Virus record (IMG/VR): IMGVR_UViG_3300032675_000001
Span: 1-64,000 of that record
Reading direction: 5' to 3' (one strand)
Length of the DNA stretch: 64,000 nt
Part shown: positions 31,092 through 63,007 of the stretch, piece by piece
Position numbering within the stretch: position 1 is the stretch's first letter
Layout: each line of letters opens with the position of its first letter
The notes under the pieces: generated by a model
Told to the model about the DNA's origin: nothing
Database searches by the model: none
Seen by the model: the letters and a program-made list of their open reading frames with translations, nothing else
Position numbers and translations under genes: made by a program

Positions 31092-32498
31092 TTATTTCTT
31101 AAGTGAGTTAAGCATTGCTTTGAGTTTCGCACCCTGTGTGTCGCCATGGACACGTTTTGACGGGTCTTCTAAAGTCTCTTGGACCAAATCATTAGTGGAA
31201 AACACTTTACTGGATTGTTTTATCTGACTCATAATCTGATTTGCACTTTGCTGTGGTTTATCACCAGAATCTGGGTCTTCGTCTGTAATACGCATCGTTT
31301 CAATGTTGTATTCTAAGTCAATCTTCTGACCAACACCAGTAGAACTACGAGATTTCATGCATTGAATCTGATACTTACCACGTTCACGCATACTTCTACT
31401 CGTGAAGATACCAAACACATAGTCGGCAGTATTGATCTTTGAAATACCACCTGCGATGTGACTATGATCAAACTCAATCTCTTCAACTGCACTACGATTT
31501 AACTGTGATGCAGTTACCATCAGAATACCCAACTCTTTCGCGAGATTGCGTAGTTCTTCCGATACATACTTGTCTTTGATAAACTGGTCATTGGGATTAA
31601 CCTTTACCGACACTGGCATAACCAAGTCAAGATAGTCAATCATCACAAAGTCAACTTTAATGCCTGTCTGAATCTGAACTTCTTTCAGGTATGCGCGGAT
31701 ATCATTGACATTGCTCTGTGCTGGTAGACCCTTGACGCGATACTGACCAGACTTCTTTGCCACCATCTTAACCTTGAGTTCCGCAGTATCCATGTCTCTG
31801 CGAATCTCTTTGGTGCTCATGCTTGTGAGCATTGCGTCGGTGCGAAGTGAAGTGAGTTCTTCTGAAAGTTCAAGGGTGATATACACGCCACTCAATCCAG
31901 CCTGTAGCCAGTTAAGTGCAATGTTCATCATAACGAGTGACTTACCCGAACCGGAACCACCCGCAAAGATATTCAACTCACCACGAGACATACCACCATA
32001 CATAACGCGGTCAAGCTGCGGCCAGCCCGTACTTACCTGACCACCAGCATTGAAGTATTTGTTGAGACGTTCTTTCGGATCGGCAAAGTAGTCTGTTCCC
32101 ATATCTCTCTGTAGAGAGATTTGAACAGCATCTTTCACCAACTTTTCTACTGGATTAAAGTCTCCCTTCTCCAATAAATCTGCCGCTTTAAGGATTGCGC
32201 GTTCAAGTTCTTTGCGTTTGGTGAATGATTCAAACTCTTCCAGAAACCAATCATAATGGCCGGAATCAAGACCTTCAATAGTTTCAATCTCAACTCCAGT
32301 TGTAGCTTTGATCTGAATAGGATCAGGCATAACACTATACTTGTTAGTGTGTTCCGCCAAAAAAGTAGCAACTGGCCTTAACGTGCGATCAAAGTTTTCT
32401 GCGTTCATGATGTTCATAACACGGGTATAAAGTTCCGCATTGGTGACCATCATTCTAAGAAACAAGGTTTGTATTTCTAAGTTATGCTCTGTTATCAA
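31092..32498 (-). CDS. Replicative DnaB-family helicase (gp41-like)
   Basis: GGSGSGKS Walker A, ITLELSE, IDYLDL, TASQLNR, MKSR; real start is probably TTG at 32498 rather than 32597. Confidence 0.92.
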   Translation of the reverse strand: MITEHNLEIQTLFLRMMVTNAELYTRVMNIMNAENFDRTLRPVATFLAEHTNKYSVMPDPIQIKATTGVEIETIEGLDSGHYDWFLEEFESFTKRKELERAILKAADLLEKGDFNPVEKLVKDAVQISLQRDMGTDYFADPKERLNKYFNAGGQVSTGWPQLDRVMYGGMSRGELNIFAGGSGSGKSLVMMNIALNWLQAGLSGVYITLELSEELTSLRTDAMLTSMSTKEIRRDMDTAELKVKMVAKKSGQYRVKGLPAQSNVNDIRAYLKEVQIQTGIKVDFVMIDYLDLVMPVSVKVNPNDQFIKDKYVSEELRNLAKELGILMVTASQLNRSAVEEIEFDHSHIAGGISKINTADYVFGIFTSRSMRERGKYQIQCMKSRSSTGVGQKIDLEYNIETMRITDEDPDSGDKPQQSANQIMSQIKQSSKVFSTNDLVQETLEDPSKRVHGDTQGAKLKAMLNSLKK

Positions 32499-32562
32499 GT
32501 TTTCTTCTCGCCATCTGAATCTTAATCTTACACTATGTTTGTAGTAAATGCAATAGTATTGG
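32482..32562 (-). pseudogene. Decayed duplicate of the primase 3' end
   Basis: Translates PILLHLLQT*CKIKIQMARRKLDNRA*, versus primase PTLLSILQNATTSKIKIELAKKRILRH. Confidence 0.75.
32525..32553 (-). promoter_or_regulatory. Candidate sigma70 promoter for the helicase, inside the primase remnant
   Basis: TTGCAT-N17-TAAGAT. Confidence 0.55.
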
Positions 32563-32646
32563 GATAAATAAAAGCGTAGTTCACGGTGGTGGAACACCTA
32601 ACTACTCTAATGTCATAGAAGGAAACATCAGCAATGACTATTTATT
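32563..32646 (+). ncRNA. Conserved structured endonuclease leader, copy 1
   Basis: GATAAATA..GTAGTT CAC GGTG gtggaa CACC T AACTAC TCTAA TGTC atagaagg AAACA TCAGCA ATG ACTATTTAT. Confidence 0.8.
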
Positions 32647-33284
32647 CACCTACTGGTCACCGAAAGATATATGAACATCATTTCGGTTCCATCCCCAAAG
32701 ATACAACCGGGCGCTCGTATGAGATACATCACATAGATGGTGATCATTCAAATAATGACCCAACTAACCTAAAATGTGTTACCATTCAAGAACATTATGA
32801 TATCCATTATTCGCAAGGTGATTGGGCCGCATGTCTGTTGATTGCGAACCGAATGAAAGTAACAACGAAGGAAAAATCCGAGTTGAGCACTCAGGCAAAT
32901 ACTAAACGAGTAGCAGACGGTTCACATAACTTCTTAGGAAAAAATAACCCATCACACGATAGAGTAGCAAAAGGTATACATAACTTTCAAGGTGAATCTA
33001 ATCCTGCCAAGCAAAAAGTTAAATCCGGCACATATCACATGCAAGAAAAAAATAATCCATCGAAACTTCGCGTAGATGATGGTACACACAACTTCTTAGG
33101 TGAAAGCAACCCATCACATAAAAGAGTGGCAAACGGCACGCACAACTGGCAACAACCAGTTAATGAAAATCATCCAACTCAGTTTAAATGGAAGTGTCCA
33201 CATTGTGATAAAGAGGGCAAAGGCAAAAGTATGTTTAAACGGTGGCATGGTAACAAATGCGGTTCACTGCTCCAAATGTCGTAA
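32634..33284 (+). CDS. Free-standing HNH homing endonuclease with GxHNF repeats and C-terminal zinc finger
   Basis: YEIHHIDGDHSNNDPTNL...EHYDIH; five 18-aa repeats; CPHC...RWHGNKC. Confidence 0.9.
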   Translation: MTIYSPTGHRKIYEHHFGSIPKDTTGRSYEIHHIDGDHSNNDPTNLKCVTIQEHYDIHYSQGDWAACLLIANRMKVTTKEKSELSTQANTKRVADGSHNFLGKNNPSHDRVAKGIHNFQGESNPAKQKVKSGTYHMQEKNNPSKLRVDDGTHNFLGESNPSHKRVANGTHNWQQPVNENHPTQFKWKCPHCDKEGKGKSMFKRWHGNKCGSLLQMS

Positions 33285-34250
33285 TATTCGTTTTTTAGCG
33301 AGTTCTATTTTAATCTTACTGGTAGTTGCGTTTTGTAAGATTGACAAAAGCGTCGGTAGCTTACCATAGGTGCGACTCGCATCATTTACGTCTTTAACAT
33401 CAGTGTCCCAGTTTGGAATACTGACCTGAAAACCCAACTCAAGTGCTTGGTCACAGATAGTCAGTCCCGTTTTATCCTGATCGGGGACTACGATGATAGT
33501 TCTGTTTAGATTTCGCAGAATATCAATCTGTGTTTCATGTATGGTGTTAGAAGTTAATGCACACCCACCAATACTTAAAGCATCAAATATACCTTCTACT
33601 ACAATACAGCAATGTGAATCTGGCTTTTGGAGGTCATATCCAAACAAATATCCCACCTGCTGATCTTTGATATATTTCGGGGTGCGATCATCAAGATAAC
33701 GGCTTACATGACCAACAATCTTGTTTTTAAAAGTATATGGAATGATGATGCGATTGGAATTGCGACCCTCATCATTTGGCGTAACCATATATGGATAATC
33801 TTTGTAGTTCATCCCACGCTTTGTTAGATAATCAATGAACACTTGATGGGCAGGATTGTTTTCGTCAATCAGTTCTGCATTAGGAAGCAAAACTTCCTTA
33901 AACTTGATTGCCTTTTTCTTCTTGACAACTTTAGCAAGATCAAGTAAGTCTCGGTGTTTTAAACTTTCCAAGTTCCATTTAGTGACTTGAGAATCGTCAA
34001 TACCCAACCAACGCATCATTAGCTTGGTATTACCACTGAGTTGCTTCCCTAACGTGAAACCACATTTAAATCCACAGTTGAAGCAATGATATGACCAGTT
34101 AACACCTTCACTGAGTTTGACTCCACCTCTCATACGTTTGTCGGGCTTATGGCCACGATGATGGCAACAGAACGCATTAACGCTTATCCAGCCACTAACC
34201 GTGTGTTTTTTCTTTCCCGGTATTAGAGATAGGACATCAAACATAAACAC
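33264..34250 (-). CDS. DNA primase (gp61-like)
   Basis: N-terminal zinc motif (HCFNCG), RIIIPY, VVEGIFDAL TOPRIM, PDQD, KDVND. Confidence 0.9.
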   Translation of the reverse strand: MFMFDVLSLIPGKKKHTVSGWISVNAFCCHHRGHKPDKRMRGGVKLSEGVNWSYHCFNCGFKCGFTLGKQLSGNTKLMMRWLGIDDSQVTKWNLESLKHRDLLDLAKVVKKKKAIKFKEVLLPNAELIDENNPAHQVFIDYLTKRGMNYKDYPYMVTPNDEGRNSNRIIIPYTFKNKIVGHVSRYLDDRTPKYIKDQQVGYLFGYDLQKPDSHCCIVVEGIFDALSIGGCALTSNTIHETQIDILRNLNRTIIVVPDQDKTGLTICDQALELGFQVSIPNWDTDVKDVNDASRTYGKLPTLLSILQNATTSKIKIELAKKRILRHLEQ

Positions 34251-35169: not shown

Positions 35170-35550
35170 ATGGATAGCAACGACTTTTTCAGTAAATTGA
35201 GCGAAAATCACCCGTTTATAACGGTCTGTTCTTACGCGGGACAAGACTATGTGGGGATTATTCAAAACAGAGATGATATGGTAACGACCATATACGACTA
35301 TGGATCAATTGTAGAACCAGAGTTGAAGTCAAGATTTTTGGAGTTGGGTGATATATGGTGGTGGGAATCAAATAGAACGATTCCCATCAATCTTTTTTTG
35401 AAGCAAGATTGGAACATCTTCAAACCATATATCAAGACGTTCAATAATAAAAGTTTAGTTATACTTCATGGACCAGTGGTGAGCATTAATGATTTCTTGA
35501 AAAAGAGAACCAAAAGACGCTCAATCACCATGGTCAAACGCCTGCCCTAG
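35170..35550 (+). CDS. Hypothetical protein
   Basis: Start MDSNDF after CTAAATA; FLELGDIWWWESNR.IPINLFL. Confidence 0.65.
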   Translation: MDSNDFFSKLSENHPFITVCSYAGQDYVGIIQNRDDMVTTIYDYGSIVEPELKSRFLELGDIWWWESNRTIPINLFLKQDWNIFKPYIKTFNNKSLVILHGPVVSINDFLKKRTKRRSITMVKRLP

Positions 35551-36037
35551 CTTTCTTCTTTTGATCTTTTGTTCTGCGTTCTTTGGCCAACTTAAAAGTT
35601 AAATCGCCAACACGCTGATCAAAGGTGATTCCGATCAAATGGTCATATTCATGTAAGAATACACGGGCTTCCATTCCAGTTATTTCTCTTTCAATGCCTT
35701 CGCCTGCTATATTTTGATACTGCACAATGCATGATACAGGACGCTTTACTTTCATGAATAAGTCAGGGAATGACAGACAACCTTCCATTCCAGACACACG
35801 ATCTTCTGACAGAGAAACAACCTTAGGATTGATGCAAGCAACCATCTTAGTAAAGTTGCCCATGATAAAGATGCGCTTGCTGATTCCGACTTGCGGTGCA
35901 GCGAGACCAACTCCACCATTGTTGATCATGAACTTCATCATTTCCTTGATGAGTTCTTCCGGTGAACCGTCAACCTCAAAGTCCCATTCTGCTGAGACTT
36001 CTGATAGTTCGGGGCTGTTTTCTTTAAGTAGTTCCAT
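35534..36037 (-). CDS. def: Peptide deformylase
   Basis: GVGLAAPQVG, EGCLS, HEYDHL. Confidence 0.95.
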   Translation of the reverse strand: MELLKENSPELSEVSAEWDFEVDGSPEELIKEMMKFMINNGGVGLAAPQVGISKRIFIMGNFTKMVACINPKVVSLSEDRVSGMEGCLSFPDLFMKVKRPVSCIVQYQNIAGEGIEREITGMEARVFLHEYDHLIGITFDQRVGDLTFKLAKERRTKDQKKKARAGV

Positions 36038-47048: not shown

Positions 47049-47561
47049 CTACACACAGGAGATTATGTTGTCAAGCAGAAAAACAGTAATCTTTGAAAAA
47101 CCTTCCTCTTCGGTTGGAAGGGTCAAAGACTTAACCATAGTCCCCAGTACATGCTGAGGAATAGTCTTGCCTTTACGAGAGTTTAGCCTGCGTTCCCACT
47201 CATCCTGTTCAGGAGTCGGAAACACCACTGCTTCAAACGTGTATCCATGATTCTTAAAGAAATCAATAAACCTCTTACGAGACTTTACCGACAGATTAGT
47301 GCGATCAATGATCACGCTTTCACCATTTTCTGCACACTCAGTAGCATAGTCCCACATGACCTTTTCAGCAAACCCAACGAGTTCCTTGAATCCCTGATCA
47401 TACGTGTAGCCATACTGGTGTGCTACTTCCTCAATGATCTTGTCAGTGGAAAGCACCACATCATGGCCACGCTTGAACACGTTTTCCACCCTACGCTGAG
47501 CAGTCCACGTGGACTTCCCAGAGCCAGGCACACCGACAAGAATAGTACAGGTCTTAGTCAT
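47049..47561 (-). CDS. Polynucleotide-kinase-like P-loop kinase (kinase domain only)
   Basis: GVPGSGKST, IIDRTNL...R; downstream of the RNA ligase. Confidence 0.75.
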   Translation of the reverse strand: MTKTCTILVGVPGSGKSTWTAQRRVENVFKRGHDVVLSTDKIIEEVAHQYGYTYDQGFKELVGFAEKVMWDYATECAENGESVIIDRTNLSVKSRKRFIDFFKNHGYTFEAVVFPTPEQDEWERRLNSRKGKTIPQHVLGTMVKSLTLPTEEEGFSKITVFLLDNIISCV

Positions 47562-47721
47562 CTTCTTTTTCCTTCAATAGATTGCGAGTTCGTTCCACAA
47601 TACAGTTGCCTTTGTCTTCCAAAAAATGTGCCTGACAATAGCCGTGATGATCATGATGACATGGTTCATCGTGAATGTCAAGCCATTCTTGTAGCAGTTT
47701 GGTTAATTCGTTAGTCATCAT
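47554..47721 (-). CDS. Small His/Cys-rich protein (55 aa)
   Basis: MMTNELTKLLQEWLDIHDEPCHHDHHGYCQAH...C; promoter TTGACA-N17-TATAAA at 47739-47767. Confidence 0.5.
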   Translation of the reverse strand: MMTNELTKLLQEWLDIHDEPCHHDHHGYCQAHFLEDKGNCIVERTRNLLKEKEDD

Positions 47722-47774
47722 AACTACCCTTCATTGTTTTTATATACAAAAATAATTCATATGTCAAGAAGAGA

Positions 47775-47854
47775 GATAAATAGTCGTGAGTCGCGGAAGC
47801 CCAATTCCCACTCACTCTAATGCTATGAAGGAGCAATCAGCATGACTACTTATT
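47775..47854 (+). ncRNA. Conserved structured endonuclease leader, copy 3
   Basis: GATAAATAGTC GTGAGT CGC GGAA gcccaa TTCC C ACTCAC TCTAA TGCT atgaagg AGCA ATCAGC ATG ACTACTTAT. Confidence 0.8.
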
Positions 47855-48540
47855 CAAAAAACAGAACACCCAGCAAAATTTATCGTAAAATTTACGAAGA
47901 TTACTATGGTCCAATCCCAATAGATGCTGATGGAAAATCCTATGAAATTCATCATATAGACGGCAATCATAAAAATAACGACCCATCTAATTTAATCGCA
48001 GTATCTGCACAAGAACATTATGATATTCATTATTCCCAAGGCGATTGGGGAGCTTGCTGGTTAATGGCAGAAAGACTGAAGTTGTCATCAAAAGAAATAT
48101 CAGAATTGGCACGATTGGCGGCGAATAGAAGAGTAGAAAATGGAACTCACAACTTCCAAGATTCGGAGTCCCAGAGAGAAAAAGCACTGAGAATGGTCCG
48201 TGAAGGGACAAATGTTTTTGTTGGCGGCGAAATTCAACGCCAACACAATAGACGCAGAGTAAATGATGGTTCACACCATTTACTCAAACGTCCCGATGGA
48301 ACAAGTCACTCATCAGATAGAGTTAATGCAGGAACCCATAATTTTCAAGACAGCAAGTCTCAGCAGGAAAGAGCATTGAAAAGGGTTAAAAATAAAACTC
48401 ACAATTTTCAAAAAAGAGAAGGATATGAACATCCTTCAACGTCCGAAAAATGGTATTGCCATACTTGCAAAAAAGAAGGAAAGAATGCGGGAAGTAGAGG
48501 TAGATACCACAAAGGACATGAGGTTACTATAATTAAATAG
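47842..48540 (+). CDS. Free-standing HNH homing endonuclease with GTHNF repeats and zinc finger
   Basis: YEIHHIDGNHKNNDPSNL...EHYDIH; CHTC...RYH. Confidence 0.9.
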   Translation: MTTYSKNRTPSKIYRKIYEDYYGPIPIDADGKSYEIHHIDGNHKNNDPSNLIAVSAQEHYDIHYSQGDWGACWLMAERLKLSSKEISELARLAANRRVENGTHNFQDSESQREKALRMVREGTNVFVGGEIQRQHNRRRVNDGSHHLLKRPDGTSHSSDRVNAGTHNFQDSKSQQERALKRVKNKTHNFQKREGYEHPSTSEKWYCHTCKKEGKNAGSRGRYHKGHEVTIIK

Positions 48541-49768
48541 CATTAAACTTTACGTTGTGGAACCATTTGTCTCGCAGTGCTTCATACTTAGTATTGCGAG
48601 ACAAATTGTTAATAATAACACTATATATTGCATCTTTAACTTGCTCTTTAGTGCCTTCTTTATCCCACAAAGAGAACATAATAGGGCGCGTGAAGCTATC
48701 AAAGTTGGTTGCGTGATTAATTGCAAATTCTTTACGATCACCGATATACTTATCAGATTTATAAAATTGAACATCAGACCAAATTTTATTAACCCTCTGA
48801 TTGATTGCTTTGTTAAAGTCATTTTCAAACACAGTAATTGCATCGCGATCCTCTACGGGTAGATGTGCCTTAACATCATCGATGGTGTTTTCCAATATCA
48901 TTTGCACTACATTGCGATCTTGCAGGATTGCTTCCTTCGCCTTATGAATCTGGAGATACCAATGGCACTTCAACTTCAACATATGCCCATCATCAAAACG
49001 AACCACGAATCCTTCAAGGTCTTCCAGATCACGAACGTATTCAAGGAAAGCCTTCATATCAGTCTGCGGCTCGAATGCACGAACTACAGGAAGATATCCG
49101 CCCTTAAATGTAAATGCATTAACATTACCGACCATAGCATCATGTGTAAGATATCGGCCCGTGTCCATCTGGCGAATAGCAGTCAGAACAAGCTGATCTT
49201 CTTTATAATCAAGAACGATACGTTGCTTACGCGAACACCATTCAAAGATAGGCGTTAGGCCAGCCAGAAGCATTTCAACTGCAAACTCTTCATAAAGAGG
49301 ATTGTTCTTGACGAACTCCTCAACAGGCTTTGCCACATCGGTAGCACCCATCTTCGTGCCCCAGATCATCTGACCATCCACAATGAACGGTGCAATCATG
49401 GAACCATCCAGCTTCTCAAGGATCACATGAGGACGCGACAGATCAATGACATGATCCTGAGTCTCTTCACGCTCGTTCACGTTGAAGAACTTATGGAACG
49501 GACGACGAATGATGTCACCAGTCTTCGAGTCGAAGATGATACCACGACATTCACGGCGAATACGAGCATGAAGATTTTCTATTTCATAATGATCATGATT
49601 ACCACGCAAATCATTAGAAGCAATCACATCAGGAAACGTATCAGCCATCATCACATTGTAAGAAATACAAGTATAAGGACCTTTATCCGCAATAATGAAC
49701 TCGTCCCTGCCTTCGATAGCAGGGAGCACATCAGAAATATTTTTAATAATCGGGAAGGTATAATTCAT
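48533..49768 (-). CDS. rnlA: RNA ligase 1 (T4 Rnl1-like)
   Basis: RECRGIIF, PFHKFFN, EKLDGS motif I, FEW, EGFVV, LKLK. Confidence 0.92.
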   Translation of the reverse strand: MNYTFPIIKNISDVLPAIEGRDEFIIADKGPYTCISYNVMMADTFPDVIASNDLRGNHDHYEIENLHARIRRECRGIIFDSKTGDIIRRPFHKFFNVNEREETQDHVIDLSRPHVILEKLDGSMIAPFIVDGQMIWGTKMGATDVAKPVEEFVKNNPLYEEFAVEMLLAGLTPIFEWCSRKQRIVLDYKEDQLVLTAIRQMDTGRYLTHDAMVGNVNAFTFKGGYLPVVRAFEPQTDMKAFLEYVRDLEDLEGFVVRFDDGHMLKLKCHWYLQIHKAKEAILQDRNVVQMILENTIDDVKAHLPVEDRDAITVFENDFNKAINQRVNKIWSDVQFYKSDKYIGDRKEFAINHATNFDSFTRPIMFSLWDKEGTKEQVKDAIYSVIINNLSRNTKYEALRDKWFHNVKFNAI

Positions 49769-49829: not shown

Positions 49830-49911
49830 GATAAATAAAGTTGTAGTTCGCGGAATGGGGATTCCCAACTACTCTAACGCTTAAGAGGAGCAATCAGCAT
49901 GAATATTTATC
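49830..49911 (+). ncRNA. Conserved structured endonuclease leader, copy 4
   Basis: GATAAATAAAGTT GTAGTT CGC GGAAT gggg ATTCC C AACTAC TCTAA CGCT taagagg AGCA ATCAGC ATG AATATTTATC. Confidence 0.8.
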
Positions 49912-50627
49912 ACGCGACAAATGACCGTTCACCTTACACATATTTGATCGGATGGACAAAACATAATATATGGTATTATGGAGTAAGATATGCTAAAGGG
50001 TGTCACCCATCCGAATTCTGGATAAAATACAAAACTTCATCGAATTATGTAGCAGACTTCGTGGCGGTGCATGGTGATCCAGATATTATACAAATAAGAA
50101 AAACATTTACTAATGTTGAATCCGCCAGGCAGTGGGAAACCAAAGTACTCAAAAGATTAAAAGTAATCAAATTAGAGAAATGGCTGAATAAACATGATGG
50201 TAAGGCAGTAGACCCTGCAATCCTATCTATCACAACAGCCCGCATGAATGCGAACATGACTTCGGAAGAAAAAACTCAACGCGGAAAGAAAGGTATGGAT
50301 TCAAGATGGTCTACGGATTCTTCCCTTCGTCCAATAATAGAAATAGTTTGTCCTGTTTGCGGAACACGCATTATCACAAGGGACCCGCATATATCCACGT
50401 GCAGTAAAAAATGTGGATATATTAATAGACCATCACAAAAAAACATACCAAAACTGAAAAACAGTAAAACATATATCATTCAATATCCAGATAATACTGA
50501 ACACATTATTACAGGACTTCGTAAATTCTGCATAGAACATTGTCTCACAGAAAGAATACTATCCAGTACTCTTTCCGGTAAAAGAAACAAACAACATAAG
50601 GGATACAAAATTGTAAAGGCATTATAA
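49899..50627 (+). CDS. Free-standing GIY-YIG-like homing endonuclease with zinc ribbon and NUMOD1-like C-terminus
   Basis: PYTYLIGW...WYYGVRY...YKTSS...WETKVL...WLN; CPVCG...CSKKC; FCIEH...HKGY. Confidence 0.8.
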   Translation: MNIYHATNDRSPYTYLIGWTKHNIWYYGVRYAKGCHPSEFWIKYKTSSNYVADFVAVHGDPDIIQIRKTFTNVESARQWETKVLKRLKVIKLEKWLNKHDGKAVDPAILSITTARMNANMTSEEKTQRGKKGMDSRWSTDSSLRPIIEIVCPVCGTRIITRDPHISTCSKKCGYINRPSQKNIPKLKNSKTYIIQYPDNTEHIITGLRKFCIEHCLTERILSSTLSGKRNKQHKGYKIVKAL

Positions 50628-61529: not shown

Positions 61530-61593
61530 TTGTAATCCTGTATAAGTTATAAAATTACTTATGCTATGTTCAATCGTTAAATTTTTATTTGAT

Positions 61594-61675
61594 GATAAAT
61601 AAAAGTGTAGTTCGCGGGCGTCCACTCCCCAACTACTCTAATGCTATAAAGGAGCGATCAGCATGTCTATTTATC
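61594..61675 (+). ncRNA. Conserved structured endonuclease leader, copy 5
   Basis: GATAAATAAAAGT GTAGTT CGC GGG cgtccact CCC C AACTAC TCTAA TGCT ataaagg AGCG ATCAGC ATG TCTATTTATC. Confidence 0.8.
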
Positions 61676-62262
61676 GTAAAATATACGAACAGAATTTTGG
61701 ACCTATTCCAAAAGAGCCAAACGGAAGAACTTATGAAATTCACCATATTGATGGCAATCATGATAACAATGACCCTATAAATCTCAAGGCTGTAACAATC
61801 CAAGAACACTATGATATTCATTATTCACAGCAAGATTGGGGAGCTTGTCTATTAATAGGTAAGCGTCTCAATCTTTCTCCTGAAGAAATTTCTAGCATAT
61901 CAAGTAGAAATGCAAAAAAACAAATTGAGAACGGAACGCATCCTTTTCTTAATCCTGAAGTTGGTCGTAAAAGCATTATTAATGGAACGCACAATTTTTT
62001 CGGTGGTAGTATACAAAGTAAAAGCAATCAACGTAGACTAGCAAATGGTTCGCATCATTTATTAAGAGAAAATAGCCCACAAATACAAAATAAAACGCAT
62101 CATTTTTTCGGAGGTGATGTTCAGCGAAATAACAATTTTACGAGATTGGCAAATGGGACTCATCCATCGCAGACTGTTTGGAAATGTGAACATTGCGGCA
62201 AAACTGGACGAGGCAAAACTAATTATAATAGATATCACGGCGATTCGTGTAAAAATATTTAA
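61663..62262 (+). CDS. Free-standing HNH homing endonuclease with GTHxF repeats and zinc finger
   Basis: YEIHHIDGNHDNNDPINL...EHYDIH; CEHC...RYHGDSC. Confidence 0.9.
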   Translation: MSIYRKIYEQNFGPIPKEPNGRTYEIHHIDGNHDNNDPINLKAVTIQEHYDIHYSQQDWGACLLIGKRLNLSPEEISSISSRNAKKQIENGTHPFLNPEVGRKSIINGTHNFFGGSIQSKSNQRRLANGSHHLLRENSPQIQNKTHHFFGGDVQRNNNFTRLANGTHPSQTVWKCEHCGKTGRGKTNYNRYHGDSCKNI

Positions 62263-62627
62263 TTATTTTTTCTGTAATCGCCAACTTTTCTTGTTGGACT
62301 TACCTTGTTGGTATCTTCGCGTTCGGTGCTTTTAGATTTTGCCCATTTGCGACCACTTTTGTCCCCTACTTGTTTTGCAGCAAAGTCAAGCATCTTTTGT
62401 TCCGCATCAGTATAGGCATGGAACATCGGATTGCCTCCGATAAAGTTTTCAGATGGAGTCGGAAACTCAGGAGCACCCGCCAAAGCAATACCCATTCTCC
62501 AATGCATATATGAGTTACCATTACTGATATTCTGGTCATCATATGTGTTCACAGCACCCATTTCATTACCGAAGGATTCTGCATCCAACTTATGACTAGA
62601 TTCAGTAATGAACTCGTGTGCTCGCAT
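62259..62627 (-). CDS. Probable internal head protein, paralog of 62627..63007
   Basis: MRAHEFITE; YMHWRMGIALAGAPEFPTP; NKVSP. Confidence 0.65.
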   Translation of the reverse strand: MRAHEFITESSHKLDAESFGNEMGAVNTYDDQNISNGNSYMHWRMGIALAGAPEFPTPSENFIGGNPMFHAYTDAEQKMLDFAAKQVGDKSGRKWAKSKSTEREDTNKVSPTRKVGDYRKNN

Positions 62628-63007
62628 TATTTTTTGTAGCCTTTGACTTTTCTAACTGGACTTACTGTATTAGTATTTGACATTTCTGTGCTGCGATTAT
62701 CGCTTACCTTTTTCACTTTTCCGGCACCAACAGTCTTTGCAGCAATATTGATAATTTCAAGTTCTTCATCTGTATAAGTGGAAAGAAGCGGATCACCTGC
62801 CATTGGTCCTACTGGTGGCGTGGGATAATCTGGAGCACCAGCCATCGCAATACCAAATCTCCATGCGAGATAAGGAGAACCATTTGATTTGTTGATACTC
62901 AAATCGGGCATACTGATTGCGCCCTTTATAGCATCAAGTTGCCCTGCTGCAAAATCTTTAGGTTGAACCGGGGAATCAGCCTCTGTAATGAATTCTCTTG
63001 CTCTCAT
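62627..63007 (-). CDS. Probable internal head protein
   Basis: MRAREFITE; YLAWRFGIAMAGAPDYPTP; NTVSP. Confidence 0.65.
   Translation of the reverse strand: MRAREFITEADSPVQPKDFAAGQLDAIKGAISMPDLSINKSNGSPYLAWRFGIAMAGAPDYPTPPVGPMAGDPLLSTYTDEELEIINIAAKTVGAGKVKKVSDNRSTEMSNTNTVSPVRKVKGYKK

What the first reader, a model, noticed from the sequence alone, without database searches (positions are those of the whole stretch)
32482..33357. HNH cassette inserted inside the primase gene and supplied a recoded replacement C-terminus
Seen: right at the leader boundary (32562), the minus strand reads CCA ATA CTA TTG CAT TTA CTA CAA ACA TAG TGT AAG ATT AAG ATT CAG ATG GCG AGA AGA AAA CTT GAT AAC AGA GCA TAA, i.e. 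PILLHLLQT*CKIKIQMARRKLDNRA*. This aligns with the current primase end PTLLSILQNATTSKIKIELAKKRILRHLEQ on the far side of the HNH gene. The old end still overlaps the probable helicase TTG start (ancestral coupling), and the new end overlaps the HNH stop by 21 nt. Inference: a non-splicing element invaded an essential gene by carrying a diverged copy of its 3' end. That restores the protein and probably removes the cut site, and it predicts the nuclease target near the YGKLP codons.
Basis: partly seen in the sequence, partly recalled or inferred. Interest (0 to 1): 0.8.

Follow-up and report, generated by a model that had tools for sequence, protein, structure and literature searches.

The report
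Nuclease cassette that replaces primase's tail
In a freshwater jumbo phage, a selfish homing-nuclease gene sits inside the end of the DNA primase gene and supplies a substitute copy of the primase's last 30 codons. The original end is left behind as a dead remnant that still carries the start of the helicase gene, and a second phage shows the same design, so this is a splicing-free way for such elements to live inside essential genes.

Summary
Minus strand: primase (34250-33264) ends in a 30-codon tail (33356-33264). An HNH_3 endonuclease gene lies on the plus strand (32634-33284), overlapping the primase stop by 21 nt, with a conserved 71-nt leader (32563-32633). Next comes a dead second primase tail (32562/32544-32482), whose last 17 nt overlap the helicase TTG start (32498, not 32507).

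In about 140 cassette-free relatives the primase end overlaps the helicase start directly. The nearest clade ends like the remnant (38-40 of 45 nt identical), not like the current tail (20-23 of 45). A profile of 151 native tails finds only two significant hits in the window: the current tail and the remnant (E 1.9e-5).

An independent phage (L401, primase 57% identical) has the same layout. It has a related replacement tail, an intact remnant starting at the same Leu|Pro codon boundary, and the same DNA-binding module fused to a GIY-YIG-like rather than an HNH nuclease.

Both cassette-bearing alleles are altered in the most conserved DNA block of the gene, just upstream of the junction, which is the likely target.

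This is a phage counterpart of the fungal mitochondrial "gene hybrids". Nuclease activity and the cut site are untested, and remnant positions 32562-32531 are ambiguous.

The parts
33264..34250 (-). DNA primase gene (Toprim). The ORF lists a GTG at 34250; relatives align from the ATG at 34244.
   Evidence: Toprim_2 E 2.5e-6; phrog_47 DNA primase, E 3.3e-37; more than 300 relatives.
33264..33356 (-). Replacement C-terminus (tail'): 30 codons plus stop, PTLLSILQNATTSKIKIELAKKRILRHLEQ*. It is of a foreign type.
   Evidence: It is 20-23/45 nt identical to the nearest clade in its last 15 codons. It has a TCA/ATC codon signature. The AKKRIL motif is shared only with the tail' of L401.
33357..33380 (-). 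Altered left flank: codons ASRTYGKL replace the near-universal AVVKYG(K/R)L. This is the likely recognition site in native alleles and the likely co-converted or immunising changes here.
   Evidence: SRT is unique among 160 distinct primases. The block KDVNDAVVKY is the most conserved 30-nt DNA window of the whole gene (rank 1 of 949). L401 also has Ser at the first of these positions.
32634..33284 (+). HNH_3 endonuclease gene, 216 aa. The nuclease domain is aa 9-54. Repeated GTHNF modules and a CxxC zinc-finger-like end occupy aa 82-213. It is convergent with the primase.
   Evidence: HNH_3 E 2.3e-13; phrog_12324 intron-like DNA endonuclease, E 9.4e-33; catalytic columns invariant among six paralogues.
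33264..33284 (.). 21-nt convergent overlap of the primase and HNH 3' ends.
   Evidence: Similar 4-12-nt overlaps occur at HNH2, HNH3, L184, L401 and L409.
32563..32633 (+). Conserved cassette leader: GATAAATA box, a hairpin (GTAGTT..AACTAC), then AAGGA and ATG.
   Evidence: alignment and folds. The same leader precedes HNH and GIY-YIG-like genes in L002, L085, L008, L401 and L409.
32531..32562 (-). Ambiguous 32 nt. Either the decayed first codons of the old tail (PILLHLLQT*C, with a 6-nt deletion and a stop), or a cassette-borne outward promoter-like element (TTGCAT, 17 nt, TAAGAT), or both.
   Evidence: Comparable TTGnnn-17-TAnAAT layouts lie at the same offset from the leader in L008 and L409, which have no remnant.
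32482..32530 (-). Secure remnant of the ancestral primase end (KIKIQMARRKLDNRA*). It also carries the helicase translation-initiation region.
   Evidence: nhmmer E 1.9e-5; 38-40/45 nt identical to the nearest clade. Third-codon positions of this segment are unusually conserved in relatives (0.73 against 0.545 gene-wide).
31092..32498 (-). DnaB-like replicative helicase gene with a TTG start at 32498.
   Evidence: DnaB_C E 1.1e-21. The homologous codon is TTG in 69 and ATG in 8 of 144 distinct relatives.
33307..33319 (-). 13-nt direct repeat (GTAAGATTAAAAT). Its partner is at 32531-32519 (GTAAGATTAAGAT). The two copies bracket the divergent part of the insertion.
   Evidence: local alignment (12 of 13 identical).

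Best explanation
A free-standing homing-endonuclease cassette lies inside the 3' end of the primase gene. In this phage family the primase end overlaps the helicase start, so there is no neutral intergenic site. The cassette has three parts: a diverged substitute for the last 30 or so primase codons, the endonuclease gene on the opposite strand, and a conserved leader. It is inserted at or next to the Leu|Pro codon boundary of YGKL|PTLL. The substitute tail closes the primase reading frame without any splicing. The original tail stays downstream and is no longer translated as primase. Its last 50 nt or so are kept because they hold the helicase start and initiation region.

Inferred mechanism: the shared DNA-binding module recognises the highly conserved native sequence around DAVVKYGKL|P in cassette-free phages, and the nuclease cuts there. 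Repair then copies the cassette from a cassette-bearing co-infecting genome, using the primase body as the left homology arm and the native tail plus helicase as the right arm. On this view the remnant plays the role of 'exon 2' in intron homing. The recoded flank and tail protect the carrier from being cut again.
For: Shown:
- The ancestral layout is primase overlapping helicase: 139 of 144 distinct junctions.
- The remnant is significant and of the native type. The current tail is of a foreign type.
- L401-403 is an independent replicate. On the primase-body tree it falls in a different clade from the window, and supported branches force at least 2 changes. It has tail' ..AKKRILWRLK*, a convergent endonuclease, the same leader, and an intact remnant (nhmmer E 3.5e-15). 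That remnant scores higher than the active tail and starts at profile position 11, the Leu|Pro boundary.
- The C-terminal 132 aa of the L401 endonuclease are 68% identical to the window HNH. Its N-terminal domain is GIY-YIG-like instead. So one targeting module is paired with two different nucleases at the same site.
- Related endonucleases occupy the same primase-helicase junction in L184 and L409, and a decayed copy does so in L008.
- Both alleles with intact endonucleases are altered (ASRTYG, ASVRFG) in the most conserved DNA block of the gene, 7-37 nt upstream of the junction.
- The family is currently mobile. Paralogue HNH2 is 100% identical in a phage whose flanking genes are 91% identical, and DNA identity decays with distance from the cassette.
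- There is no intron. Rfam finds nothing, and the gene lies antisense to the primase.
Against: - No donor with a near-identical cassette was found. HNH1 has no homologue above 68% partial identity.
- DNA identity between the window and L401 tails (63-67%) is only slightly above that of the primase body (59%). The claim that the tail travels with the cassette therefore rests on motifs (AKKRIL, the Ser codon type, DAS), not on a clear identity step.
- The left end of the foreign tract is not resolved. QNATTS is identical to native L239 at the DNA level.
- The first third of the window remnant is ambiguous.
- No cassette-free allele was seen in lake metagenome contigs that hold this phage.
- Nuclease activity, cut site and immunity are untested.
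Confidence: 0.8

Rival explanations
1. The duplication arose in place. The primase 3' end was duplicated locally, for example by slippage, and the endonuclease gene later landed between the copies. The upstream copy then diverged in place. No foreign tail was imported.
For: The two copies are in the same orientation and share a 13-nt near-identical core. QNATTS of the current tail is identical at the DNA level to native L239. The original event deep in the past cannot be reconstructed.
Against: The current tail carries codon and motif states that are rare or absent in the whole family but shared with the cassette-linked tail of the unrelated L401 lineage: a TCN Ser codon, DAS and AKKRIL. The last 15 codons are only 44-51% identical to the native clade, while the untranslated remnant is 84-89% identical. 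That is the reverse of what divergence in place of a functional copy would give.
Confidence: 0.08
2. Ordinary mosaic recombination rather than homing. The primase 3' part plus an intergenic endonuclease gene came in by general or illegitimate recombination from a phage whose primase and helicase do not overlap (the L184 or L409 type). The nuclease does not target this site or is no longer active.
For: L184 and L409 have the endonuclease cleanly between primase and helicase with no remnant. HNH1 has no close relatives, so recent mobility of this copy is not shown. No polymorphism was seen in the metagenomes.
Against: The same junction (Leu|Pro) recurs in two separate primase clades. The same DNA-binding module is found with two different nuclease domains at this one site. 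Alterations lie precisely in the most conserved DNA block next to the junction. There is a clear homing signature for paralogue HNH2.
Confidence: 0.12
3. The similarity of 32482-32562 to a primase tail is chance, and the segment is simply the helicase 5' untranslated region.
For: The segment is short and AT-rich, and its first third is not significant on its own.
Against: nhmmer gives E 1.9e-5 against the whole window on both strands, with the next hit at E 0.85. Identity to the nearest clade is 38-40/45 nt, with the same frame, stop position and 17-nt overlap geometry. L401 has an intact counterpart.
Confidence: 0.01
4. The insert is a self-splicing intron or an intein that is removed from the primase transcript or protein.
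For: Many phage endonuclease genes of these families are intron-encoded.
Against: No Rfam family matches 32000-33800 on either strand apart from one sub-threshold chance hit. The endonuclease is on the opposite strand. The primase ORF is closed by its own stop at 33264. The remnant has an in-frame stop and a 6-nt deletion.
Confidence: 0.01

Closest known systems
Fungal mitochondrial 'gene hybrids' made by mobile endonuclease ORFs (Allomyces macrogynus atp6; Glomus atp6, atp9, cox2, nad3; Rhizopus atp9; Mortierella cox2), as described in PMC3630166
   Same: An endonuclease ORF enters the 3' part of an essential gene together with a foreign, in-frame copy of the C-terminus. The native C-terminus stays downstream as an untranslated duplicate. 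The native copy is closer to relatives than the inserted one (there 91-98% against 64-81%; here 84-89% against 44-51%).
   Different: Here the host is a phage, not an organelle. The endonuclease gene is antisense and overlaps the new stop convergently instead of being fused in frame or placed downstream in the sense direction. The native remnant is partly retained by selection, because it contains the start of the next, overlapping gene. The nuclease families differ (HNH_3 or Seg-like with GTHNF repeats).
Free-standing Mob and Seg homing endonucleases of T4-like phages and 'intronless homing' (MobE, SegF, SegG; review PMC2988022)
   Same: An N-terminal HNH_3 domain with a C-terminal zinc-finger-like DNA-binding region. 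Presence/absence polymorphism between related phages. Location next to essential replication genes. Co-conversion of flanks (seen here for HNH2). A late-promoter-like box plus hairpin before the start codon.
   Different: T4 elements sit between genes or split genes into pieces. The review does not mention any duplicated or replaced gene end (0 matches for 'duplicat'). Here the element lies within a coding region and restores it with its own copy.
Intron- or intein-encoded homing endonucleases
   Same: The element sits inside an essential gene, apparently at its own target site. The gene stays functional, and the downstream 'exon' serves as a homology arm.
   Different: There is no splicing of RNA or protein. 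Function is restored at the DNA level by carrying a substitute exon. No ribozyme was detected.
Genes-in-pieces created by endonuclease insertion (Aeh1 nrdA/mobE; T4 genes 39/60 with mobA)
   Same: A free-standing endonuclease gene is inserted within a conserved coding region of a phage replication or nucleotide-metabolism gene.
   Different: In those cases the host protein is split into two polypeptides that reassemble. Here the protein stays in one piece, and the displaced fragment is discarded.

Membership tests
Free-standing HNH (Mob-like) homing endonuclease | HNH_3 nuclease domain with intact catalytic residues | tested here: met
   Pfam HNH_3 E 2.3e-13. H32, H33, D35, N40, N41, N45 and H54 are invariant among six paralogues.
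Free-standing HNH (Mob-like) homing endonuclease | Separate DNA-binding region, modular with respect to the nuclease domain | tested here: met
   aa 82-213 (GTHNF repeats plus CxxC) are 68% identical to the C-terminus of P0082, whose N-terminus is GIY-YIG-like. The same module is found with PF01541 and PF13392 partners. DNA binding itself was not tested.
Free-standing HNH (Mob-like) homing endonuclease | Present in some and absent from other closely related genomes at the same locus | tested here: met
   Absent from the three nearest relatives (L239, L001, L002) and from about 140 others. Present in the window, with related copies in L401, L409 and L184.
Free-standing HNH (Mob-like) homing endonuclease | Co-conversion: flanking identity highest at the element and decaying with distance | tested here: inconclusive
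   No close second copy of HNH1 exists for comparison. The gradient is clearly met for paralogue HNH2: 99-100% over the cassette, falling to 61-93% and 77-88% in the flanks.
Free-standing HNH (Mob-like) homing endonuclease | Site-specific cleavage of the element-free allele and resistance of the carrier allele | not testable with these tools
   Indirect only: unique substitutions in the most conserved DNA block next to the junction in both carrier lineages.
Endonuclease-mediated gene hybrid (foreign C-terminus + endonuclease ORF + native C-terminus remnant) | Inserted C-terminus in frame with the gene core, keeping the conserved residues | tested here: met
   The ORF is continuous to 33264. 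PTLLSILQ.AT.SKIKI and the basic stretch are retained.
Endonuclease-mediated gene hybrid (foreign C-terminus + endonuclease ORF + native C-terminus remnant) | Native C-terminus retained downstream and closer to relatives than the inserted one | tested here: met
   The remnant is 38-40/45 nt and the current tail 20-23/45 nt identical to the nearest clade. In L401 the remnant scores 52.0 against 42.4 bits for the active tail.
Endonuclease-mediated gene hybrid (foreign C-terminus + endonuclease ORF + native C-terminus remnant) | Endonuclease ORF lies between the two C-termini | tested here: met
   32634-33284 lies between 33356-33264 and 32562-32482, but on the opposite strand.
Group I or II intron, or intein | Ribozyme core or intein splicing blocks spanning the insert | tested here: not met
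   No Rfam match at E up to 1 apart from one chance snoRNA hit. The primase ORF ends with a stop before the insert.

The most novel reading that the evidence does not exclude
Phage homing endonucleases have a third, so far undescribed way to live inside essential genes, besides introns/inteins and intergenic sites. It is an 'exon-carrying' cassette inserted exactly at its own cut site. It brings a recoded copy of the gene's end and uses the displaced native end as its homology arm and as the expression signal for the overlapping downstream gene. Mirror-image versions replace 5' ends (L002 and L085 in the helicase). The targeting module is exchanged between HNH and GIY-YIG nucleases. In freshwater jumbo phages this makes overlapping gene junctions hot spots of invasion.
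Probability: 0.5. Interest if true: 0.72.

Novelty: new variant of a known kind. Interest (0 to 1): 0.62.

Why it matters
It shows how a selfish nuclease gene can occupy a coding region of an essential phage replication gene with no splicing machinery, by repairing the gene at the DNA level.

It extends a phenomenon known from fungal mitochondria to bacteriophages. It also links that phenomenon to overlapping, translationally coupled genes, where there is no neutral insertion site.

It gives a concrete, testable target prediction (the DAVVKYGKL|P codons of native primases) for two nucleases that share one DNA-binding module but have different catalytic domains.

For annotation and phylogeny, primase C-termini and helicase N-termini in these phages can be foreign, and short 'intergenic' segments can be displaced gene ends.

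Tried and rejected
- **GenBank phages.** A megablast of the locus against GenBank phages found nothing. Only about 30% identical primases of jumbo phages were found by protein search.
- **Donor search.** A degenerate DNA pattern for KIKIELAKKRI in IMG/VR matched only the window's own genome. A protein search for HNH1 found nothing closer than 46-57% full-length, or 68% partial.
- **Sliding-window DNA identity.** The scan along the primase, meant to map a conversion tract, failed. Synonymous sites are saturated at about 70-78% against all relatives.
- **Cassette-free allele in the population.** Contigs of four lake metagenome runs gave no credible joint. One 'skips 1472' joint has only 28 nt on one side, and one opposite-strand joint comes from a 241-nt low-coverage contig.
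- **PDB sequence search.** A search with the HNH found no solved relative.
- **Consensus promoter and terminator scan.** It did not flag the TTGCAT-17-TAAGAT element, which has 3 of 6 matches in the first hexamer. The promoter idea therefore stays speculative.
- **Remnants at HNH2 and HNH3.** Remnants of neighbouring genes were looked for by eye next to HNH2 and HNH3 and none was seen. For HNH2, relatives show RNA ligase directly abutting the kinase, so that cassette occupies a true intergenic site.
- **Other related proteins.** The contexts of P0016, P0022, P0053 and P0123 are not at a primase; no DNA could be read for P0122.
Full report
**What is there**

Three genes lie on window 31092-34250.
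- A Toprim primase on the minus strand, 34250-33264. Relatives align from the ATG at 34244.
- A 216-aa HNH_3 endonuclease on the plus strand, 32634-33284.
- A DnaB-like helicase on the minus strand.

The primase and HNH genes converge and overlap by 21 nt.

One coordinate needs correcting. The helicase TTG is at 32498-32496, so the remnant's reading frame overlaps the helicase by 17 nt. I used 32507 in early calls, which begins three codons upstream of the start.

The window is the first 64 kb of a 360,683-bp viral contig from lake water. It has no close relative among deposited phages. Its primase is about 30% identical to those of Rak2-, PA5oct- and Atu_ph07-like jumbo phages.

**Is the remnant real?**

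I collected more than 300 related loci from IMG/VR and JGI metagenomes. A DNA profile of the last 32 or so codons of 151 cassette-free primases was run over both strands of the whole window. The results were:
- the active tail at E 9.7e-12;
- the remnant (32544-32488, envelope 32564-32485) at E 1.9e-5;
- nothing else below E 0.85.

The last 45 nt of the remnant are 38-40/45 identical to L001, L002 and L082-84, and 33/45 to L239. The active tail is only 20-23/45 identical.

The first 18-32 nt (32562-32531) are weaker evidence. They align in frame with PTLLSILQ only with a 6-nt gap and about 60% identity. A clade-specific matrix puts them in the top 3.4e-4 of window positions. The family-wide matrix gives no positive score.

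In 139 of 144 distinct cassette-free junctions the primase stop lies downstream of the helicase start. In 57 of them the overlap is exactly 17 nt. The homologous start codon is TTG in 69 and ATG in 8. No relative has an intergenic segment like the one in the window.

On a tree of primase bodies the window sits in a supported four-member clade (96) with L239, L001 and L002. Their tails end ..KIKIQMARRRIDNRI*..KIKIQIARRRIDNRT* and ..PIKIQLAIRRNDNRT*. That is the remnant type.

The active tail..KIKIELAKKRILRHLEQ*, belongs to a type seen only in distant clades. The Ser of LLSIL is encoded by AGY in 149 of 160 distinct primases. It is TCN only in the window, in L007/L008/L246 (which carry a decayed cassette) and in L086. 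L401, described next, also has TCT.

**An independent replicate**

The nearest relative of the HNH's C-terminal half is P0082, on three ENA lake contigs (L401-403). That phage's primase is 57% identical to the window's and falls in a different clade. Supported branches force at least two changes for the 'cassette plus remnant' state.

Its layout is the same:
- a primase ending ..ASVRFGRLPTLLSILQSATNSKIKLQMAKKRILWRLK*;
- a convergent endonuclease overlapping the stop by 9 nt;
- the same leader, followed by a 51-nt spacer;
- a complete, uninterrupted second tail, (I)PTLLSILRNATNSKIKLQMVRTRIAKQL*, running into the helicase start.

The profile scores this remnant higher (52.0 bits, E 3.5e-15) than the active tail (42.4 bits). 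The remnant match begins at profile position 11, inside the Leu codon before Pro. The remnant resembles the tails of L401's own nearest relatives (KIKLQMMRNRLDKRL*).

The endonuclease shares 68% identity with the window HNH over 132 C-terminal residues, the GTHNF repeats and the CxxC end. Its N-terminal 95 or so residues are instead GIY-YIG-like (phrog_314, E 6.6e-5). A search with the C-terminal module alone finds it attached to both PF01541 (GIY-YIG) and PF13392 (HNH_3) partners.

So one targeting module, joined to two different nucleases, sits at the same codon boundary in two primase lineages. Each lineage has a substitute tail containing AKKRIL and a native remnant.

**More occupants of the junction**
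- L184-187 (HNH 48% identical) and L409-411 (52%) have the endonuclease, leader and convergent overlap between primase and helicase, but no remnant. Their helicases have their own ATG.
- L007/L008/L246 keep only a 76-aa fragment of the binding module plus the leader.
- L002, in the window's own clade, shows the mirror image. A GIY-YIG-like cassette with the same leader is inserted at about codon 20 of the helicase. The old 19-codon 5' end stays behind the primase, and a new, diverged 5' end is supplied.
- L085 has such a cassette right after the helicase start. The last primase codons come from the leader, and a new helicase ATG overlaps the endonuclease stop.

**Where is the target?**

Across the cassette-free relatives, the most conserved 30-nt DNA window of the whole primase gene (rank 1 of 949) covers KDVNDAVVKY, 7-37 nt upstream of the Leu|Pro junction. 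The window reads ASRTYG there. SRT is unique among 160 sequences, and 8 of 12 nt are changed. L401 reads ASVRFG. No other sequence has Ser at that position.

In the next seven codons (PTLLSIL), the window differs from L239 at 10 of 21 nt with no amino-acid change.

This pattern is what a recognition site altered in carriers would look like. It is inference, not a cleavage assay.

**Is the family mobile?**

Paralogue HNH2 (47842-48540) and an adjacent small ORF are 100% identical at protein level in L321/L322, whose RNA ligase and kinase are 91% identical to the window's. DNA identity is 99-100% over the cassette. It falls to 61-93% within the ligase and to 77-88% in the kinase. That is a typical homing and co-conversion gradient.

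In many relatives the ligase abuts the kinase directly, so HNH2 occupies a true intergenic site, and by eye there is no remnant next to it. This contrast suggests that gene-end duplication is tied to overlapping genes.

**Why the remnant persists (inferred)**

Its conserved part contains the helicase start. Within the nearest clade, third-codon positions of this segment are 0.73 identical, against 0.545 gene-wide. That points to a constraint beyond primase coding.

The ambiguous 32 nt read TTGCAT, 17 nt, TAAGAT. L008 (TTGAAG-17-TATAAT) and L409 (TTGTAT-17-TACAAT) have comparable layouts at the same offset from the leader. The consensus scan did not flag the window's element.

On the minus strand, the leader hairpin followed by a T-run looks like a terminator. 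The cassette may therefore stop primase transcription and restart helicase transcription. This is speculation.

**Limits**
- No donor or near-identical second copy of HNH1 was found.
- The window and L401 tails are only 63-67% identical at the DNA level, against 59% for the primase body.
- The left boundary of the foreign tract is unresolved.
- No cassette-free allele was seen in contigs of four lake runs. One run holds the stretch with no differences and may be the source sample.

**Comparison with known systems**

The closest known phenomenon is the endonuclease-mediated 'gene hybrid' of fungal mitochondria. There, a foreign C-terminus plus a mobile endonuclease ORF is inserted into atp6, atp9, cox2 or nad3, and the native C-terminus is left downstream and is closer to relatives (PMC3630166).

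The enzyme itself resembles the T4 Mob class: an HNH_3 domain plus a zinc-finger-like region (PMC10448857). The leader recalls the late-promoter and hairpin arrangement of T4 endonuclease genes (PMC2988022).

That review lists intergenic, intron-borne and gene-splitting insertions and never mentions duplication. My searches of the held library found no phage report of a replaced gene end. I therefore rate the finding a new variant of a known kind.

Noticed in passing
window 47842-48540 (HNH2) with flanks 47049-49768; L321, L322: A second HNH_3 cassette lies between the T4-type RNA ligase 1 gene and a P-loop kinase gene. It is 100% identical at protein level in a phage whose flanking genes are 91% identical, and DNA identity decays with distance from it. 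This is a signature of recent homing with co-conversion.
   Followed up: partly
window 32563-32633, 47776-47841, 61593-61662; also L002 5726-5797, L085 2756-2824, L401 2935-3000, L008 and L409: A conserved leader of about 70 nt stands before both HNH and GIY-YIG-like endonuclease genes. It has an (A/C)TAAATA box resembling a T4 late promoter, a hairpin with compensatory changes (GTAGTT/AACTAC against GTGAGT/ACTCAC), then AAGGAG and ATCAGC before the ATG. On the opposite strand the hairpin is followed by a T-run, like a terminator.
   Followed up: partly
L002 4960-5960: This is the mirror image of the finding. A GIY-YIG-like cassette is inserted at about codon 20 of the helicase. The old 19-codon helicase 5' end is retained behind the primase, and a new, diverged 5' end with a promoter-like TTGATG-17-TATAGT is supplied.
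   Followed up: partly
L085 2735-3500: A GIY-YIG-like cassette in the sense orientation is inserted right after the helicase start codon. The last primase codons (YAK*) come from the leader. A new helicase ATG overlaps the endonuclease stop. The conserved helicase motif RMMVTNAE reads RVLCTNAG, which may be an altered target.
   Followed up: no
L086 3928-4026: A cassette-free primase has the cassette-type TCT/ATC codons in LLSIL. Its tail is the closest of all to the window's replacement tail in its first part, yet it has a native-type end overlapping a helicase ATG. It could be a footprint of cassette loss by recombination between the two tails, or it could represent the donor type.
   Followed up: no
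L401 1-2812: In the second cassette-bearing phage the helicase appears to be interrupted. A 203-aa N-terminal ORF is followed by a 588-aa ORF (DUF7487, with weak Mom, sigma-70 region 4 and DUF559 hits) and then the DnaB_C part.
   Followed up: no
window 61663-62262 (HNH3) and 49899-50627: A third HNH_3 paralogue is convergent with, and overlaps by 4 nt, the 3' end of a small duplicated gene (62259-62627; paralogue at 62627-63007). A 242-aa plus-strand ORF beside the RNA ligase start begins with a GIY-YIG-like motif (NIYHAT..YTYLIGWT) but has no Pfam hit. All these plus-strand ORFs sit among minus-strand genes.
   Followed up: no
primase-helicase junction in L153, L279, L282, L284, L300, L302, L309, L314, L301, L316: Distant relatives carry unrelated inserted genes (191-1679 nt) at the same junction. 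None of these inserted ORFs was searched against protein families, and none resembles an endonuclease by eye. The junction is therefore a general hot spot for insertions.
   Followed up: no
window 32470 / 32902, run X18: One 241-nt low-coverage metagenome contig joins 32335-32470 to sequence near 32902 on the opposite strand. It is probably an assembly artefact, but this was not resolved.
   Followed up: no
window 35534-36037: A phage-encoded peptide deformylase-like ORF (GCLSFP and HEYDH motifs) lies close to the replication genes.
   Followed up: no
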